In this document: one piece after another, positions 316-28,825 of the stretch
Numbering within the stretch: position 1 is the stretch's first letter
Layout: each line of letters starts with the position of its first letter
Assembly (NCBI GenBank): GCA_964188305.1
Contig: OZ076885.1
Strand: one strand, 5' to 3'
DNA from: Podarcis bocagei
Taxonomy: Eukaryota
Length of the DNA: 64,000 bases
Position numbers and translations under genes: made by a program
The notes under the pieces: model-generated
Seen by the model: the letters and a program-made list of their open reading frames with translations, nothing else
The model's database searches: none
Told to the model about the DNA's origin: nothing

Positions 316-503
316 NNNNNNNNNNNNNNNNNNNNNNNNNNNNNNNNNNNNNNNNNNNNNNNNNNNNNNNNNNNNNNNNNNNNNNNNNNNNNNNNNNNNN
401 NNNNNNNNNNNNNNNNNNNNNNNNNNNNNNNNNNNNNNNNNNNNNNNNNNNNNNNNNNNNNNNNNNNNNNNNNNNNNNNNNNNNNNNNNNNNNNNNNNNN
501 NNN
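316..503. other. Assembly gap (188 N)
   Basis: Run of N inside the repeat array. Confidence 1.
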
Positions 504-19607: not shown

Positions 19608-21562
19608 TATTTACCAGGAAATCAATATGACCTATGTTCACTTTCATTCTTTTCAAACTGAATCAGGAGCTTTATAGGCTTCAAAGAGTTTGTATAAAAA
19701 TACTTAACAGCTATTGCCTCTCCATCTTCCCAAACCTGTGGCTAATGTATGCAGAAGGAAGACTGAGACGACAATTGGAGGAGGCAGTGCCTGCAGACAG
19801 CTCCCATGGCAGCTGACTCCATGAGATCTAGAAGGGGGCATCAGAAGGTCACTTCCCACTGACCCCTCCTGCAGGATCTTGTTCCCTAACCCCTGTAAGT
19901 TTTCCATTGTTCTTTCTACCTCCCCCGAATTCCAGTACTTAGTTGCTCTGACTGGTCATCCTGGTTGCTTATTTTCTCTCTCTCTTCATGTTGCCTATTT
20001 CTGACCTTCAGTTGCGATGTGCGGTTAATGGTGCTCAGGCAGTGATGTCTGATAACCTCAGGTACCACAGCATTGTGCAAGCTAGGTTTGGGAATCGGAG
20101 CAGAGTGTGGGTTCACCACATGCTTCCTTTGGAGGCCTGCTTTGACAGCACAGGTGTATTGTGTTCAGCTAAGACAGATCTATGAGCAACACTGCACTGA
20201 ACTGGAGGAATTAAAAATGCTACCTACCACAAGTTTCTTGATCCAGCAAGATGGTGGAGGCAATGCTCATAGTTTCATTGCTTCCAGGATCCCTAGTCTC
20301 CCCTCTACAAAGGCAAGGTAGCCATACAGTGGGAAGATGAGTGGCACCACAGAAAGTATGAGCACTAATTTCTCTCATAAAATTGCATGTAGCACTGCAT
20401 TCTATAAAAAATAGAGCAAAGTATACTACAGTATATGGACATTGTTAGAATGGGATCAAAACCTGCCCCCAAACATTGGAGTGTCAGGAATAGGGACATA
20501 TTTGTCTCCTGCAGAGACCATGGAATAAAATAAGGGGTGGTATCCAACTAAAAACTTCTGCTAGCGCAAGGACTTTTGGCCATGCAATAAAACTTCCTCT
20601 CCCTCTCCTCTCCCCACATATCCTCCTTAAATCTGTTCTGGGGGTTCCCTCAGTCCTTCAGAACAGATGTAGGGAGGGAGCAGGAGTAGAGGAGTGGGAG
20701 GGAAGCTCCACTGAACAGGCAGAAGTCCTTGCACTCAGGGAAAAATATGGCTAGGCACTGCCCAAGGGTTGAACCATTAACAGGGTCCAGTGGGTGGGTG
20801 GCTTTTTTCAACTCTACCGTGAGCAGTTGGGGGAACAATGTGCCTATGTGTGATTCTTTACCATCTTCCTCAGAAGAAAATGACAGTCTTTCACCTCAAG
20901 CGAGAACTTTAAAGGGGTGCCCTCAGGGTCTGTGTTGGACTAGAGGCAAACACTATCTATTGAACAGACTTGTCTCTGATGGCAGAGCTCCCAGTGTATG
21001 GATGGGGCGAAGGGGGGCTGCTACTAATGTCAGAGGTACAGCGGTATACCAGTGTAGTTAGCCCTTAAAAGATGTTGTTGCCTAGGTAAGTCACACCAAT
21101 CCTTGCCTCTGTATATCCAGTTCTGTGTAGCAGAAACTCCTTTCTGCAGAGCTGCACATTGCTATTATACAAGGCAATGGTGGCTCATCAGCAAAACAGC
21201 CCTGCTGCATTGGAAATACATCACCTTATAATGCCAGGGAAATGCTACAGTTCGTGACATTGCAATGATGTGCAGTTCATGTATACTGCATTCTGCTTCA
21301 CCTGCTCATTCAGTCAAATCATACATTAGGTTAACTTAATTTCTCAGGAAGTATAAAATATTCTGCCCATTCACAGCATCAAACATAAGAGAATTAGCAG
21401 TATAACTGGATATTTTGTACCGCTGCCAGAAATAACACACTGAAGGAACCCAAATACAACAAAAACCTATTTAAGCACTGTTAAAACGAAAGGTTGTAAC
21501 TTCAGTATTTTTTAATTAACTCATTAGCCCATTCTAACACATAAAGGGAAATGTTTTCTCAC

Positions 21563-22491
21563 CTGAGGCAGGTGTAACTGAAGTCCTTCACTAGGAATAG
21601 GTTGGTGAGATGGTGTTTGATCCAACTGCATGTTAAACAAGGATGCAAGAGCTGACTGAGCAGCCCGTGCTTTTGCAAGTTTTTTGTTTCTTCCAGATCC
21701 TTCAAACGTTTGGCCATCCACTGACACAGCCATTACAAAATTCTTAGCGTGACTCTCTCCACTTTCTGAGAGAAATTCATACTTTAAGCCTGGTCGAAGT
21801 TCATTCAGTATCATGACTGGATTCTTCCCACTTGTTGAGGGGTATGGTGATGGAGTAGGGAGAGACGACTGTACAAGGCTACAGGCCGCAGAAGATGACA
21901 AATTATAGTCTGCACTGGAGCTAAAGGAACCATCTCCGTTGGAATCCAGATAAAAGGAAAGATCAGACTGGGCGGGGTTTTCAAAGCCATTGAAGAGGGT
22001 ATCTGGGAAATCTGCCTGATCAGAGGTGAAGTCCGTATTTACGGAAAGAGTTCTTCCCATGGCAAGATGTGCTTCGGAAGCATTTGGAAACTGAACAAAG
22101 GACCTTAGGGCCTTCTCAGCTGCATGGAGCTTGGCTTTCTTTTTTGTAGGGCCGGAGCCTTCAAACAGCTGCCCATTAACCTCTACTGCCATCACAAAAA
22201 TAGGGGCATGAACGGGTCCTGTTTGGGAGAGAAGCTTGTATTGCAAGCCAGGCTTGATTTCATTCAGCTGCATGAGAGCATTTTTGGGCAAGACCGGCCC
22301 TGGTGTTTTCTTCCTTTTCTTTGTGCGGAACTTGGCGTGGCCATTGCTTCCCTCTTCCAAGGGTCGTTTCCTGCTGCCAGCGCCACCACCATTGGAGAGC
22401 TGGTTCCCCTCTCCGGCGCCTTGCACACTCCCATCTTTAGGTGAAATGTTGTCCATGTTGCGGTTCTCTTTAACATCAATGCTGCCTGAAC
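21563..22491 (-). CDS. ADARB1: ADARB1 large exon (929 nt): basic NLS-like segment and both dsRNA-binding domains
   Basis: cacag|GTTCAGGC...CCTCAG|gtgag. Translation includes [22 protein letters not shown]...[18 protein letters not shown] and [19 protein letters not shown]...[18 protein letters not shown] (ORF 21524..22456). Confidence 0.98.
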
Positions 22492-22540
22492 CTGTGGTGC
22501 CCAGAAAGAGTAACTTACAATGCCTTCGTTGCAGGACCTT
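22492..22540 (-). promoter_or_regulatory. ADARB1: ADAR2 auto-editing cassette: AA pseudo-acceptor (22540-22539) plus 47-nt alternative extension (22538-22492)
   Basis: ttacatttacaa|GGTCCTGCAACGAAGGCATTGTAAGTTACTCTTTCTGGGCACCACAG|GTT: exactly 47 nt between the AA and the normal acceptor, closely resembling the mammalian self-editing cassette as I recall it. Confidence 0.9.
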
Positions 22541-23182
22541 GTAAATGTAAAATTTACAGATTCCTTTATCTATCTTTGCAACTGGTTAAGTGATGTGTGC
22601 TCAAATAGTAATATCTTTATTAGGTGTAATAGGCAACTCAGAAACATACACTGAGTAAATATTCAGACATCTGATATTGGCATATGCTGATAAAAAGTTT
22701 TAATTCTGCACCAAAACACCTATTAGTATTTATATGTTAAATTACCCTCCCTAATTCTAAAACAAAAATAAATGAGCCAGTAACTGCCAAAATGTTGTAA
22801 CCCCAATTTACATTCATTTAATATCCAATTAACCTCAAACATCAGAATCCACAGGGCAATCACTTAAGATTATCTATGCAGGTAATATCAGGCACCTGCT
22901 CATCTGTATATTGAGGAAGATCCCTCTTCCTTTGAGAAAAGGAGAGTATACTATTTCTTGCCTGCAAACATTCAAGTTATTGACTTATACAGTAAAACCT
23001 GCTTTGTGCTTTATGTGGTAGTCATGTTACACGGGTGCTCCAGAGCAGACAACTCCAGAAGTAAGCTGAATGCAGGATCGCTGTTTAAACAAAGGGCTGG
23101 TTTACAGGTGACACTAAAGAATGAAGTTTCTAAACCAGAAACTTCAAATCACAGGTTAAGAACCAGGCTTGTTTAACTAATC

Positions 23183-23318
23183 CAGCCATAGGCAAACTCG
23201 GCCCTCCAGATGTTTTGGGACTACAATTCCCATCATCCCTGACCACTGGTCCTGCTAGCTAGGGATCATGGGAGTTGTAGGCCAAAAATATCTGGAGGGC
23301 CAAGTTTGCCTATGCCTG
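23183..23318. mobile_element. hAT MITE (136 bp, almost fully palindromic)
   Basis: 8-bp TSD aactaatc at 23175-23182 and 23319-23326; TIR cagccataggcaaact/agtttgcctatgcctg. Confidence 0.9.
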
Positions 23319-24571
23319 AACTAATCAGAACTCGTTTTAAACTACGGTCTAAACCAGGATATTTTGAAAATAGACGCTGCCAAGTCCTTCTGCCAGCCAT
23401 GCAAGAGGAGAAGGAAGCTCAGACGCATTCCAATTTGTGCACCTAGGGCTAAAGCATGGTTTAGCATTATGTGCACCATAGCCCTGTCTGTGGTTAGCGG
23501 AGTAAGGGAAACTGAAAGTAAAGGCTCCCAAAGTCCTCCTCCCTGCCCATGCGCAGAGTGCTCCATGGTGAAACGTTACATCTGAATGCAGTGAATATGC
23601 GGAAGGCAAACTGGGTGAACATGTTCTCTAAAGATATTGAGGGAGCAAGAACATGGCAGAAAGCCAAGTCCCTGACACTGAGTGCTCATAGGCATTTGAC
23701 ACCTGCATGCGTGGAAGTCCCTTCACCTTGATTCTGAATGTGCAGCTGCCAGAGGGCAGACCAGAAGACAGTGGCGTGCTGGAACAGCCTCATGTGCTGG
23801 GTGGATGTTTGAGGCAGGTCACTGAAACACCCTTAAATTCATATCCCTGAATATACAGCGGGCATCTTTCTTATAAACCCACTACCATGTAGCAGGTAAA
23901 CATATTCTAAGTAAATAGTATTTATGACATTTACATTTCTAAACACAAATCCCAACATATGTAGTGGAGTTCTCTGTTATAATCTCACTGTCATGTAATG
24001 TGCAAAGGTGTTCCAATTAGAGATTTTGTAGTGGACTTAAAGATAAGATAGATCTATCTATTTGTAGCTTTCAGCATCCATCTGAAGGTACAAACCTGCG
24101 GGGATGGAAGAGTAAAATAGGGTCTTTAAAAACCCCAGCCTCCACCCCAACCCCATGACACAAAGGTGCTGTAGAAGGATGCACACAGACATGTCTTTCA
24201 TGTCACTGGTAGGAGAGGATACTTTTCTCTCAGCTCAATTCTCCCACCCCATGATTGCTTCGGCAGTGGAGGGGGGCCTCCCTTCACCACCAAAGTTGGG
24301 CCCAAGCCCACTGCAATAATCAATTATTGGAATCCACCCCACCCCCCAGAAAACAAACTCTCATACCTTGTTCATCAGCAATTATATGCCATTTCCTATT
24401 GGAACCCCCTACTGTTACAAACTGCTGCTCAGCCACAGTCACATATAAAGCTACTAAATAAATAAACAAGACACTACTTTGAAGCAGGTAGATGGAATAT
24501 GTAAACTTCAAATTCTAAAAGACTAGAATTCCAACTGTCCTACTAACCAACTAGGCACCTTATCATAAATA

Positions 24572-24752
24572 CAGGCAATCTTCATTTTGCGCGGGGCTAC
24601 ATTCCAGATCCCTGCGCATGTCGGCGGGGCCCGCGTAAAGCGTTCTGTCCCTGCCCCGTCCTCATTCCACCCTTTTAGTGACGTTCTAGGGTCACTTCCG
24701 GGTTGGGCTCCGTGCATGTGTGAGCGATTGCGTGTCAGTCGGGAGTTGCCTG
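24572..24752. mobile_element. CpG-rich TA-flanked MITE, ends related to 7106-7302
   Basis: TA|CAGGCAATCTTC...GGGAGTTGCCTG|TA. Confidence 0.6.
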
Positions 24753-25133
24753 TATTAAACATAAAACTTTTCAAGAGCTGTATATTCAGAATGTAAAAAA
24801 AAAGGTTATTGGGGCAGTAAACTTATTTGACTATATTAAAATACTTATCTGAACATTACATTAGATGGACATAATACTTTTAAACACTGATGCCTTGGTA
24901 GTAATACAGAAATTCAATTTTCTAAACACTTTGTTACAAATGGCAAGCTTCTTTAAATATGCCAAACATGAAGCAATACAATTAAACATAAAATAAATTC
25001 TACTTTGCCGAAGAACCCCACCCAATCTCAGATGCCTATAATATATTCACACCATTGAGGAGGCATGATTAAGATTCAAAATTTGCTGCTCTGGAAAGTA
25101 TATTTAAATTTGTGTTAAATCCTACAATTAAAA

Positions 25134-25242
25134 GCACACAGACACCACTTCACCCAGTTGACAAAGTTGATGGAACAGTTATTAAATTTTCATTTATAAC
25201 ATCCTCCAGCAAAAGCTCGATAAGTTACTCCTTTCGGTGCTC
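25134..25242 (-). promoter_or_regulatory. Editing-site complementary sequence (ECS) for the auto-editing site
   Basis: Imperfect inverted repeat of 22495-22600. Plus strand gcacaca..ccagttgacaaag..taaattttcatttataacatcctccagc..taagttactcctttc aligns with minus-strand gcacaca..ccagttgcaaag..taaattttacatttacaaggtcctgcaac..taagttactctttc. Confidence 0.85.
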
Positions 25243-26799
25243 AAAATAACAGAAAAATAAAAGAGAGTGGATAGAAACATACAGGTTAAAAAGAGAAGAA
25301 ATAAATGTAAAATAGTGGCAAATAAAATGAAAGGAATCAATAGTTTTTCAAATTTTTAAGAACTATTTCCTTTGAAACACGTTCTGTTATATCTTAGATT
25401 TTACCTCAAATAGAAAATTTTATATGTGTACAGACATAGCCTTTTCAGAGCAGTTACATCTGCACAAAATGCTATTAAGCACACGGTTGATATTATTTGC
25501 AACATAGCAATAGCAGCAGATCAGACATGCAGATTTATTCCACCTTGAGGGAATAAATTTAAGACTGCTATGTAAGGTGATGATCCTAGAGACACACATT
25601 TGCAAGTAACCTCCCCCTTCAAGTATACATGATCGGAACCAGATTATCAAGCAATTCAGTTCCTTAGAGAAATTTATAAAATAGATTGTTCAAGATGCAG
25701 GCTTTTCGTTAACCAGTCCTGAAATGATGAAGACAGAACATTCGGAAAAAGGGCTAGTCCTTGAAAGAAGCTAAGGAACATAAATACCCAGCCTGTTGAA
25801 ATATTTGCTCTTGAAAATCATTTTCCAATTAAGCATAAACTTCCATTTGAAAACTGTAAATTCAAACATTATAGGTTTCAGTTTTTTTAAGTCCACTGCT
25901 CCTTCTTTTCTTTCTTATTAAGTGCTGAGGCTTTCAAAAATGCTTAGCCGCACACTTTCTTTCCAAAAAGGAGCTTTTGTGAATTTTTGGCCGTTTGATT
26001 TGCAAGCAGGGCAAAATTAATTGCCAGAGCTCTAGTGTCAAATCACTAAAATGACAGCATAACTGTATGATGTTTTCAAACAGTTCATGTGGGTTTTTTG
26101 GGGTACATCCCATCCTACACACTTCCTCTTTCTTTATGAGTTATTGTTTGGGCCTTTAGATCCTTAAATAGAAGACAAGTGATTTGCAAAATGTGGTACT
26201 GAATTAATCAGGAGCAGTCTATGAAAATGTCATATAAATGAAGATAGTCATTTTAAAAACACAAAGTGTGGGAAATACTTTTGGTATTTCTCATTTCATC
26301 AACTCAAGAGCAATATGCATAGCACACACATCATCCACAGTCTTCAATCATACAAAGATGTGATTCTTTATGTATTCAATGACCAAAATGCGAAGAGCTA
26401 TTGAGCGGCAATGGCTAGCAAGATTTTTTACTTTTATATTTAGATCAGTTAGCATTTAATCATAGAATCGCAGAATTGTTCTCTTCACTTCAGTGTACCA
26501 TGTGTACACTGCACAGGCCGCAAACTCCCTGGGTTTATAGAATTAATTGTGTGGTTCTCTGGATCTTCATCAGTATATTTTTGCTCTCTCTTGTATTGTA
26601 CAGACAAATAAAATGCAAAAAGGGGAATTATCCCCCCAAGAGAAAGACTCAGGCTGGAGATTTGACTTTTTCAGAAAGTCAAAAATGGCATGGTGGAGAC
26701 AGGATTGCTATGGTATAAACAATTATGCAACATTTGTTGGTGGCAGAAAGAGGTATACAATTTCCGGAGAGGTTGTCCTGTTAGTCTCTTGCAGACAAA

Positions 26800-26892
26800 A
26801 CAATGAGTCTTGTGGCACCTTAAGGATCAACCAATTTATTATGGCATGACCTTTCGTGGAGGGCAGTCCACTTCATCAGATGAATGAAGTGC
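26800..26892 (-). mobile_element. Short Penelope-derived element with hammerhead-like core (26845-26882)
   Basis: Minus strand CAU-CUGAUGA-a-GUGGA[cugccc]UCCAC-GAAAGGUC-AUG plus family tail ccttaaggtgccacaagactc. Confidence 0.6.
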
Positions 26893-28329
26893 ATATATGA
26901 TAAAATGCTGACACCCTGCTCCAGTGCCACCAAGTAGGGTAGCTCACTGGCAACAGGCACACACTCATGTTAATTGCCACTACCTGCTTGTCGCCTAAGC
27001 CAGGGCTTGTGGGAGTCCTACTGACATATGGAGTCTTCTCAGAAGTAGGGAACTCCCCTCCCAATCTCCCATCCACTTTAGCCCAGTAACACATCTCAAA
27101 CATCAAAGCAACATGGGAGCACAGTACTTGAGTGTGTTCAGAAACCCGTACAGTCAACAAATCAAAAGGAGTATTATACACTATGTGAGAATATTGGTCT
27201 ATCAACAACTGGGCAAACCAAGCCATGTGTTAAACATGCTTTCCTTCTTTTTCACATATGCTCATCTGTATCAGCCTTCTCCAACCTGGAAGGCTGATAT
27301 ACATCAGAAGCAAGGGAGGTGCCTGACCTATGGTTGCAACTATGCCATACTTCCACAAGAAGGAAAATGCTAGCTAAAATGTTCCCAGAATAAAAAGAGA
27401 GAAACAATCATGACATTAATCACAGCTGTTGAAAAGTGCTATGGTCTTTAAAATGGCTAAAACCAGCCAAAAAACCAAAGGGGTATAAAAACCCACCTCG
27501 TGATCCCAAATGATACTGAAAATATGGTGTTACTGAAGTCTGGCTGGTTTCACAAAACCACTGCGGGTGCACATTTTAATGACATGCCCAGGCATTGAGC
27601 ACAAATACTTTAGCACTTAGTAGTAAAGGCAGATAAGAAGGGATCATTAACCCTTATACTTTTGGAAGGAAATTCACATATGCATCCATGAAAAATTGCT
27701 ACCTTGTCTGCTGTGGTAGGTAAGCATGAACCAGGTATCAATGCACATTACCCAGGAACATGTATTCTAACGGTAGTGAAGATCTGCTATGACATCAGTC
27801 CTATAGCCAATATTCTTAGATATTCTAGAAACTGCATTTTAATGTGAAAACTGACTTAAAGGAACGGAGGATGAAAGTTAGGAAGGTCAACAATAAAATA
27901 AAAAGGTGTGACTCAGTGACCACAGAAATTTAAGCAAGACTATGCACATCTATTCAAAAGTAAACCACATCAAATACAGTTAGGCTTACTCTCAGGAAAC
28001 TGTGTCTAGGACTACCACCTTGGGCTTAACTTAGTGGGGCTTAGTTCTGAGTAAACATGCATACCGTTGGGCCTGCACACCCATTGAAGACAACAGCTCC
28101 TAAGCACATGAAGCATTTAAAACTTATTAATTTCAGTGGTAATTCAGTATTCTTTTTCCAGGACTGTACAAATTATTATAACATAATTCTTTCCATAGAA
28201 TAAAAGTAGGGAACTCCTCTGAATGTCAGGCGGGATTAGAAGCAAAAGGTGACTGACTTGAAAAGGGCAAGCACTAAGCAGCTGCAGAAACAGTAATGGG
28301 TTTAGCACTGTATAACATGAACATCTTAC

Positions 28330-28357
28330 TCATATTCTCTTCATCATCTTTGTCCAT
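28330..28357 (-). CDS. ADARB1: ADARB1/ADAR2 first coding exon, coding part (MDKDDEENM + 1 nt); whole exon probably 28330-28401
   Basis: Minus strand reads ttccag|AAGG...CACA ATG GAC AAA GAT GAT GAA GAG AAT ATG A|gtaag. Matches the vertebrate ADAR2 N-terminus MDIEDEENMS; phase 1 joins the next exon in frame. Confidence 0.93.
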
Positions 28358-28825
28358 TGTGAAAAAGTTCTTCAGCCTCTAGACTGGTGTAGAGTTTCCT
28401 TCTGGAAGACAAAATGTGGAATCTTGGTTATCTGTATATTTTGAATGTTTCAGCTTGCGTGATTAAGATGTCTGAGAATTAGACCAAAGTAGCTAATTTT
28501 CCAATTTACATCTGACCTGTTTTTATCCAGCTTGAAGAATATATTATGTATCCCACACTTTCTTAAAAACAAGGGGTAGGGTTTTTTCTACATGAGATTT
28601 CCCCATTTTTATCCTAATAAAAGCTCTGAGGTAGAAACTGACTGAGTGGGGATTTGAACTCAGAGATTTCTGGTGGAAGATTATAACCAATAAGGAAGGG
28701 GCAGCTAACCATCTCCAGGCCAAGGCCACAATGAACCACAGCCAGCTTTCTGGAGGCTGAAGTGGGGGTGGCAAGAATGGCTGTTAGCTGCCTTCTAAAA
28801 GGGGATGCACTGGAACTGTCATATA

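What the first reader, a model, noticed from the sequence alone, without database searches (positions are those of the whole stretch)
22492..25242. Complete ADAR2 self-editing feedback duplex in a lizard, with the ECS located 2.66 kb upstream
Seen: an AA dinucleotide (22540-22539) exactly 47 nt before the dsRBD-exon acceptor, and a ~105-nt imperfect inverted repeat at 25134-25242 that can pair with 22495-22600 in the pre-mRNA. The -1 A at 22539 aligns with 25199, and several differences are G:U-compatible. Known: mammalian ADAR2 edits this AA to AI, creating a proximal acceptor that adds 47 nt and frameshifts the mRNA (negative autoregulation). Inference: the circuit is functional in squamates. 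The mechanism is not new, but the squamate ECS is unlikely to be annotated.
Basis: partly seen in the sequence, partly recalled or inferred. Interest (0 to 1): 0.85.

Follow-up and report, generated by a model that had tools for sequence, protein, structure and literature searches.

The report
Lizard ADAR2 self-editing duplex, conserved
The lizard gene for the RNA-editing enzyme ADAR2 carries the same long-range intronic RNA duplex that lets the mammalian and fish enzyme edit and switch off its own messenger; it is real and strongly conserved, but it is the expected copy of a mechanism known since 1999.

Summary
ADARB1 (ADAR2) lies on the minus strand. An AA at 22540-22539 sits exactly 47 nt before the dsRBD-exon acceptor (AG 22493-22492). 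An upstream intronic arm (25132-25250) pairs with 22481-22602.

- Cofold energy is -94 kcal/mol, z = -10 against shuffles, and this is the best partner among 2112 windows of the 64 kb.
- The duplex survives a global fold of the 2.8-kb segment, with P(22539:25199) = 0.97.
- Using the AA as an acceptor shifts the frame and ends translation after 100 aa.

I fetched eight orthologous loci: Gekko kuhli, three unnamed amniotes, carp, toadfish and two more fish-like loci. All have the AA, a 47-nt cassette, a U opposite the -1 A and both arms. ECS-to-site spacing ranges from 0.43 to 5.6 kb. In the 5.8-kb lizard intron only the two arms align to any other species, and in most comparisons they are better conserved than the coding exon. 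Of 86 consensus pairs, 7 show compensatory changes and 18 one-sided changes.

This is the squamate orthologue of the known vertebrate ADAR2 autoregulatory element (rat 1999; +47 transcript seen in zebrafish). Editing and the +47 mRNA in lizards remain untested, because no transcript data were available. Real but ordinary.

The parts
28330..28357 (-). Coding part of the upstream ADARB1 exon. ATG is at 28357-28355 and the last exon base is 28330; donor GT is at 28329-28328. It encodes MDKDDEENM plus the first base of codon 10.
   Evidence: Sequence read; translation joined to the next exon gives an ADAR2 N-terminus.
22492..28329 (-). Intron of 5838 nt that holds both arms of the duplex. Only the two arms align to other species.
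   Evidence: blastn of the whole intron against nine loci finds only 25327-25035 and 22623-22492, plus up to 22736 in the closest squamate.
25132..25250 (-). Editing-site complementary sequence (ECS), the upstream arm of the duplex. U 25199 lies opposite the -1 adenosine.
   Evidence: Cofold, shuffle and window scan, global fold. Identity to the other loci is 77-92%.
22481..22602 (-). Editing-site arm of the duplex. It covers the AA, the 47-nt cassette, the normal polypyrimidine tract, acceptor AG 22493-22492 and the first bases of the exon.
   Evidence: Identity to the other loci is 84-97%.
22539..22540 (-). AA dinucleotide, the -2 and -1 sites. Deamination of 22539 would give AI, which is read as a 3' splice-site AG.
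   Evidence: Sequence. Both A's pair with U 25198/25199. AA is invariant in all nine loci.
22492..22538 (-). 47-nt cassette included when the proximal AI acceptor is used. It carries adenosines at +10 (22529), +14 (22525), +23 (22516) and +24 (22515), the positions edited in rat.
   Evidence: Length and sequence. Rat sites are listed in PMC2694175. The cassette is 47 nt in all nine loci.
21563..22491 (-). Large ADARB1 exon encoding both dsRBDs (929 nt). Donor GT is at 21562-21561.
   Evidence: ORF, homologues annotated as double-stranded RNA-specific editase 1 with dsrm domains, donor sequence, tblastn.
22264..22266 (-). Premature TGA reached in the +47 reading frame. The predicted product is 100 aa and has no dsRBD or deaminase domain.
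   Evidence: In-silico splicing and translation.
22454..22456 (-). In-frame ATG (Met22) downstream of the cassette. It is a possible re-initiation codon in the +47 mRNA, as proposed for rat Met25.
   Evidence: the rat analogy comes from PMC2694175.

Best explanation
This is the squamate orthologue of the vertebrate ADAR2 (ADARB1) self-editing autoregulatory element.

In the pre-mRNA, an intronic ECS (25132-25250) folds back over 2.66 kb onto the region just upstream of the dsRBD exon (22481-22602). This forms an imperfect duplex of about 86 bp. That step is shown thermodynamically and by conservation.

The next steps are inferred from rat, mouse and zebrafish. ADAR2 protein binds this duplex and deaminates A 22539 (site -1). 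The resulting AI dinucleotide is read as an AG 3' splice site. The 47 nt 22538-22492 are then added to the mRNA, which shifts the frame after codon 9 and ends translation at TGA 22266-22264. The product is 100 aa with no dsRBD or deaminase domain.

More ADAR2 activity therefore gives less productive ADAR2 mRNA, which is negative feedback. Weak re-initiation at Met22 may give some leak.
For: Anatomy:
- AA lies 47 nt before the acceptor.
- The upstream donor is at 28330.
- The +47 frame gives a frameshift and a 100-aa product.

Duplex:
- Energy is -93.8 kcal/mol with 22539:25199 paired.
- z = -10 against shuffles, and it is the top partner in the 64 kb.
- It is retained in the 2.8-kb global MFE with P = 0.97.

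Host gene:
- ADAR2 with dsRBDs and downstream deaminase exons.

Orthology and selection:
- Both arms are found in Gekko kuhli, three other amniote loci, carp, toadfish and two further fish-like loci.
- All nine have AA, a 47-nt cassette and U opposite -1.
- The arms are the only alignable parts of the 5.8-kb intron.
- The site arm is more conserved than exon 2 in every comparison, for example 90% against 70% with carp. The ECS arm also beats the exon in seven of the eight.
- The alifold consensus has 86 pairs: 51 invariant, 18 one-sided, 7 compensatory, with 97% of cells paired. That compares with 35-46% for slid registers. None of 1000 column permutations reached the observed pairing, and 12 of 1000 reached 7 double changes.

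Literature:
- Mechanism and rat sites -2, -1, +10, +14, +23, +24 are given in PMC2694175. All six positions are A in the lizard.
- A +47 transcript was sequenced in zebrafish (PMC4018279).
- Autoregulation in mice is described in PMC4761006 and PMC9479739.
Against: - There is no direct evidence of editing at 22539 or of a 28330-to-22538 junction in any squamate. No transcript data could be reached, and none of 120 homologous database proteins carries an exon1-cassette junction.
- Use of the site varies between species: about 80% +47 in mouse brain against about 15% in human (PMC2694175). A conserved structure therefore does not fix the strength of the feedback.
- Covariation is modest because both arms are nearly invariant, and the permutation control ignores phylogeny.
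- The proximal acceptor has a poor polypyrimidine tract, although this is also true of the orthologues.
Confidence: 0.85

Rival explanations
1. The duplex is the true orthologue and may be edited, but in squamates it is used so little that it is not a meaningful feedback loop. This would resemble the low human level. Its conservation would then reflect another role of the same duplex, such as masking or timing the normal 3' splice site.
For: +47 inclusion differs about five-fold between mouse and human (PMC2694175), and a review doubts its relevance in humans (PMC9479739). The duplex also covers the normal polypyrimidine tract and acceptor at 22510-22492. The squamate loop is about twice as long as in the other amniote loci.
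Against: The AA, the exact 47-nt length and the adenosines at all rat editing positions are invariant from fish to lizard. Splice-site masking alone would not require this.
Confidence: 0.12
2. The two conserved islands are DNA- or RNA-level regulatory elements with separate functions, such as an intronic enhancer or splicing enhancers. Their complementarity would be incidental to function.
For: Most paired columns (51 of 86) are invariant, so sequence-level constraint cannot be fully separated from structural constraint.
Against: Where the arms do vary, pairing is kept. There are 18 one-sided G.U-type changes and 7 double changes, and 93% of cells in variable pairs remain paired, against 26-52% in slid registers. 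Spacing varies 13-fold while the arms stay complementary. The mouse ECS deletion is reported to abolish autoregulation (Feng 2006, as cited in PMC9479739).
Confidence: 0.02
3. The inverted repeat is a chance match or a transposon-derived repeat.
For: The intron is AT-rich and holds many short inverted repeats.
Against: z = -10, and it is the best partner of 2112 windows. There are no other copies in the window. The element is orthologously conserved in eight other vertebrate loci.
Confidence: 0.01

Closest known systems
Rat/mouse Adarb1 self-editing at the -1 site (Rueter, Dawson & Emeson 1999; Dawson 2004; Feng 2006 ECS-deletion mouse)
   Same: Same gene and same intron, the one before the dsRBD exon. 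An AA becomes an AI proximal acceptor, and a 47-nt frameshifting cassette is included. An upstream intronic ECS forms a long imperfect duplex. Adenosines sit at -2, -1, +10, +14, +23 and +24, and there is a downstream in-frame Met.
   Different: The ECS lies 2.66 kb upstream in the lizard and Gekko, against 1.3-1.5 kb in the three other amniote loci sampled. I did not align a named rodent sequence. The second cassette base is G (G.U with the ECS) in the squamates and A (A-U) in most others. Editing has not been demonstrated in the lizard.
Zebrafish adar2 +47 transcript (PMC4018279; gene structure from Slavov & Gardiner 2002)
   Same: A 47-nt intron-derived insertion that depends on editing of the upstream A. 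The cyprinid (carp) locus aligns to the lizard arms at 90% (site) and 86% (ECS) identity.
   Different: Spacing is 1.1 kb in carp. Fish have duplicated adarb1 genes.
GRIA2 Q/R-site exon-intron duplex with intronic ECS
   Same: A long-range imperfect duplex that directs site-selective ADAR2 editing, conserved across vertebrates.
   Different: The GRIA2 edit recodes an exon codon and its ECS is downstream. Here the edit creates a splice site and the ECS is upstream, with both arms intronic apart from the first exon bases.
Drosophila Adar S/G auto-editing
   Same: An ADAR2-type enzyme that tunes itself by editing its own transcript (PMC9479739).
   Different: The fly edit recodes a residue that lowers activity. 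It is not an edit-created splice site and the element is not homologous.

Membership tests
Vertebrate ADAR2 (ADARB1) self-editing -1 site / ECS autoregulatory element | The host gene is ADARB1 and the site lies in the intron immediately upstream of the dsRBD-encoding exon. | tested here: met
   The exon 22491-21563 encodes two dsrm domains. The best hits are double-stranded RNA-specific editase 1, with 94% identity to Gekko kuhli. Deaminase exons lie downstream.
Vertebrate ADAR2 (ADARB1) self-editing -1 site / ECS autoregulatory element | An AA dinucleotide lies exactly 47 nt upstream of the canonical acceptor. | tested here: met
   AA is at 22540-22539 and AG at 22493-22492. The cassette is 47 nt in the window and in all eight orthologous loci.
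Vertebrate ADAR2 (ADARB1) self-editing -1 site / ECS autoregulatory element | Inclusion of the cassette shifts the reading frame and truncates the protein before the dsRBDs. | tested here: met
   The +47 product is 100 aa and ends at TGA 22266-22264.
Vertebrate ADAR2 (ADARB1) self-editing -1 site / ECS autoregulatory element | An upstream intronic ECS forms an extended imperfect duplex that includes the target A. | tested here: met
   Energy is -93.8 kcal/mol and 22539:25199 are paired. z = -10. The duplex is kept in the global fold with P = 0.97.
Vertebrate ADAR2 (ADARB1) self-editing -1 site / ECS autoregulatory element | Both arms are homologous to those of species in which the +47 form has been observed. 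| tested here: met
   The arms align to the cyprinid (carp) locus at 90% and 86%, and to seven other loci. The +47 transcript is documented in the cyprinid zebrafish. No named rodent sequence was aligned.
Vertebrate ADAR2 (ADARB1) self-editing -1 site / ECS autoregulatory element | Adenosines are present at the additional rat editing positions (-2, +10, +14, +23, +24). | tested here: met
   22540, 22529, 22525, 22516 and 22515 are all A. The positions come from PMC2694175. Taking +1 as the first cassette base is my inference.
Vertebrate ADAR2 (ADARB1) self-editing -1 site / ECS autoregulatory element | Pairing is maintained by substitutions across species. | tested here: met
   Of 86 pairs, 18 are one-sided and 7 compensatory, with 97% of cells paired. 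Slid registers give 35-46%. The signal is modest because the arms are nearly invariant.
Vertebrate ADAR2 (ADARB1) self-editing -1 site / ECS autoregulatory element | A-to-I editing occurs at -1 in vivo and the +47 splice junction is present in mRNA. | not testable with these tools
   No lizard RNA-seq was available. No exon1-cassette junction peptide appears among 120 homologous database proteins.
Vertebrate ADAR2 (ADARB1) self-editing -1 site / ECS autoregulatory element | Removing the ECS abolishes -1 editing and raises ADAR2 protein. | not testable with these tools
   This needs a minigene or a genome-edited animal.

The most novel reading that the evidence does not exclude
The doubled ECS-to-site loop of about 2.6 kb was found only in the two squamate loci with enough upstream sequence, the window and Gekko kuhli (L003, the closest squamate, has too little). 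The other amniotes sampled have 1.3-1.5 kb. Squamates also have a G.U instead of A-U at cassette position +2. Together these might retune how fast the duplex forms relative to splicing. That would give squamates a different ADAR2 feedback set-point, and the lineage-specific spacing would act as a natural dial for editing level.
Probability: 0.08. Interest if true: 0.4.

Novelty: new member of a known kind. Interest (0 to 1): 0.25.

Why it matters
The finding supplies an unannotated but precise regulatory annotation for squamate ADARB1: the ECS, the -1 site, the 47-nt cassette and the premature stop. It also adds comparative data. The two arms are the only conserved islands of a 5.8-kb intron. 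The cassette length is fixed at 47 nt in every locus sampled, fish and amniote. Loop length varies freely from 0.43 to 5.6 kb.

These data support an ancient ADAR2 self-editing switch under strong purifying selection, which speaks to doubts raised from the low human usage. They do not reveal a new mechanism. A practical point follows for annotation: ORF callers routinely extend the exon into this conserved intron arm.

Tried and rejected
- Chance or transposon origin of the inverted repeat is rejected.
- Rfam has no family for this element. The only sub-threshold hit in 21400-28600 is an unrelated mir-5408-like hairpin.
- Fetching marsupial, frog and sturgeon loci and a 20-kb ENA locus failed, either with no DNA or not on record. 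Named tetrapod outgroups are therefore missing. L002, L005 and L006 are placed only by a protein tree, as amniotes near the bird and marsupial references, with L006 in a long-branch clade.
- L003, the closest squamate, has only 556 nt upstream. It covers the site arm but not the ECS.
- I looked for exon1-cassette junction peptides among 120 homologues. There were none, only genomic intron read-through ORFs.
- I did not spend a further 5.8-billion-protein search on the frameshifted peptide. Gene callers would not report it, and the spliced query has no reference.
- Feng 2006 (PMC1346902) and Slavov & Gardiner 2002 are not held. Their content is cited only through papers that quote them. My recollection of Dawson 2004 (ECS about 1.3 kb upstream in rat) is unverified here.
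- A local-only fold of the site region pairs 22539 with 22558, but the long-range duplex wins in the global ensemble.

Full report
**Observation.** The gene is on the minus strand. Reading 22700-22300 in that sense shows an intron ending in a polypyrimidine tract and AG at 22493-22492. An exon follows that translates to an ADAR2 N-terminal region ([20 protein letters not shown]...). AA sits at 22540-22539, so the stretch 22538-22492 is exactly 47 nt. The upstream coding exon runs from ATG 28357 to 28330, with donor GT at 28329-28328.

The large exon 22491-21563 encodes two dsRBDs. Its best database relatives are double-stranded RNA-specific editase 1 proteins, with 94% identity to Gekko kuhli. 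Deaminase exons follow downstream at 17406-17287, 15196-15029, 12886-12728 and 12237-12034.

**The duplex.**
- The repeat finder recovers the core inverted repeat 22505-22554 / 25184-25233.
- Cofolding 25125-25250 with 22480-22610 gives -93.8 kcal/mol. It is one continuous imperfect helix from 25132:22602 to 25250:22481.
- A 22539 pairs with U 25199 and A 22540 with U 25198, and there are many G.U pairs.
- The duplex energy of -92.5 compares with -39.8 +/- 5.2 for 300 dinucleotide shuffles of the ECS (z = -10.2).
- Among 2112 overlapping 120-nt windows of the transcript strand across the 64 kb, the two ECS windows are the best partners (-85.9 and -83.0). The next is -63.9, and the background is -36.4 +/- 7.3.
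- A global MFE fold of the 2801-nt segment 25270-22470 keeps 86 long-range pairs. In the partition function their median probability is 0.99, and P(22539:25199) = 0.97.

**Consequence of using the AA as an acceptor.** Normal splicing joins 28330 to 22491 and gives [24 protein letters not shown]... Joining 28330 to 22538 instead shifts the frame after codon 9. The product is 100 aa and ends at TGA 22266-22264, with no dsRBD or deaminase domain. An in-frame ATG (Met22, 22456) lies downstream of the cassette. This parallels the rat Met25 that has been proposed as a re-initiation site (PMC2694175).

That review lists the rat editing positions as -2, -1, +10, +14, +23 and +24. Taking +1 as the first cassette base, which is my inference, the lizard has A at all of them: 22540, 22539, 22529, 22525, 22516 and 22515.

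**Comparative evidence.** I searched the database with the exon-2 ORF as protein query. Using those hits and one metagenome pattern scan, I obtained genomic loci for eight other species.

| Locus | Source |
|---|---|
| L001 | Gekko kuhli |
| L002, L003 | two Logan contigs |
| L006 | ENA contig |
| L004, L005 | two metagenome contigs |
| L007 | Cyprinus carpio |
| L008 | unnamed NCBI assembly |
| L009 | Thalassophryne amazonica |

A protein tree with named references places the loci as follows:
- The window groups with L003 and Gekko, that is, with squamates.
- L002, L005 and L006 fall among other amniotes.
- L004, L007, L008 and L009 fall among ray-finned fishes.

blastn finds the site arm in all loci at 84-97% identity. 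It finds the ECS in every locus with enough upstream sequence, at 77-92%.

The whole 5.8-kb lizard intron was then used as query. Only 25327-25035 and 22623-22492 align to other species, extending to 22736 in the closest squamate. The arms are therefore isolated conserved islands.

The arms are mostly better conserved than the adjacent coding exon. Against carp, the site arm is 90% identical and the ECS 86%, while exon 2 is 70%. Against Gekko the figures are 97%, 90% and 86%. The one exception is the ECS in the closest-spaced fish locus L004.

Every locus has the AA, a cassette of exactly 47 nt, a U predicted opposite the -1 A, and a duplex of -86 to -107 kcal/mol. The distance from the ECS to the site varies widely:

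| Locus | ECS-to-site distance (nt) |
|---|---|
| L008 | 427 |
| L004 | 613 |
| carp (L007) | 1104 |
| three non-squamate amniotes (L002, L005, L006) | 1343-1490 |
| Gekko (L001) | 2625 |
| window | 2660 |
| toadfish (L009) | 5565 |

**Covariation.** RNAalifold on the nine concatenated arm alignments gives an 86-pair consensus.
- 51 pairs are invariant, 18 change on one side only (mostly G.U exchanges), and 7 show double changes. Overall 97.0% of cells are canonical pairs.
- Sliding the 3' partner by 1-3 columns drops pairing to 35-46%.
- Column permutation gives 95.4 +/- 0.3% pairing, with 0 of 1000 permutations reaching the observed value. It gives 2.9 +/- 1.4 double-change pairs, with 12 of 1000 reaching 7.
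- The signal is real but modest, because both arms are almost frozen. The permutation control also ignores phylogeny.

**What it is.** All testable defining features of the known ADAR2 self-editing element are met. The features are the host gene and intron, the AA at -47, a frameshifting cassette, an upstream ECS duplex that includes the target A, conserved secondary editing adenosines, and homology to the element of lineages where the +47 form is documented.

The literature retrieved here describes the mechanism and its extent:
- In rat, the edit turns AA into AI and 47 nt are included, which causes a frameshift and premature termination (Rueter 1999, via PMC2694175, PMC4761006 and PMC9479739).
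- Mice lacking self-editing overexpress ADAR2 (Feng 2006, as cited).
- The +47 transcript was sequenced in zebrafish embryos (PMC4018279).
- Slavov & Gardiner 2002 compared editing-site sequences across vertebrates. That paper is not held here.
- I found no paper addressing squamates, and Rfam has no model for the element.

**Shown and inferred.**
- Shown: the anatomy, the thermodynamic stability, the uniqueness within the window, the orthology, strong purifying selection on both arms, and a fixed 47-nt cassette length.
- Inferred: that lizard ADAR2 edits 22539, that AI is used as an acceptor, and that this lowers ADAR2 output.

Usage differs about five-fold between mouse and human, so the strength of the loop in squamates is open. 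No transcript data were reachable. The 120 homologous proteins contain only normal N-termini or ORFs that read from the exon back into the conserved intron arm, and none has an exon1-cassette junction.

**Verdict.** The finding is the expected lizard copy of a well-known, deeply conserved regulatory RNA structure. It is useful as annotation and as a comparative data point, but it is not surprising to a specialist.

Noticed in passing
window 23178-23323: A near-palindromic hairpin with 63-nt arms (86% complementary, 20-nt loop) lies inside the loop between the ECS and the editing site. It scores below threshold for Rfam mir-5408 on both strands (43 bits against a gathering score of 90). It has no other copy in the window and is absent from the Gekko and other loci. 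It may be a lineage-specific insertion that contributes to the longer squamate spacing, and it could itself be an ADAR substrate.
   Followed up: partly
window 22513-22518: A consensus 5' splice-site hexamer GTAAGT sits 20 nt into the 47-nt cassette. It is unchanged in eight of the nine loci (L008 reads GTATGT) and is paired with the ECS. This is the basis of another first-reader note (s1-359630) about a 20-nt micro-exon. Its conservation cannot be separated from the duplex constraint.
   Followed up: partly
P0009, P0016, P0018, P0019, P0022, P0025, P0032, P0047 and others: In many species the exon-2 reading frame stays open through the 47-nt cassette and the upstream site arm, giving peptides such as ...[23 protein letters not shown].... 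Automatic ORF callers therefore extend ADAR2 exon 2 into the intron in dozens of database proteins. This is an annotation artefact caused by the frozen intron sequence.
   Followed up: partly
L009 65586-65618 and 82252-82284; called genes at L009 1-9117 and 82252-84913: The toadfish locus shows a second dsRBD-containing gene fragment downstream, a deaminase-domain fragment upstream on the opposite strand, and two matches to the upstream-exon probe. This suggests tandem or assembly-duplicated adarb1 copies.
   Followed up: no
window 316-503: This is the only run of N in the window (188 bases). It is far from the feature and was left untouched.
   Followed up: no
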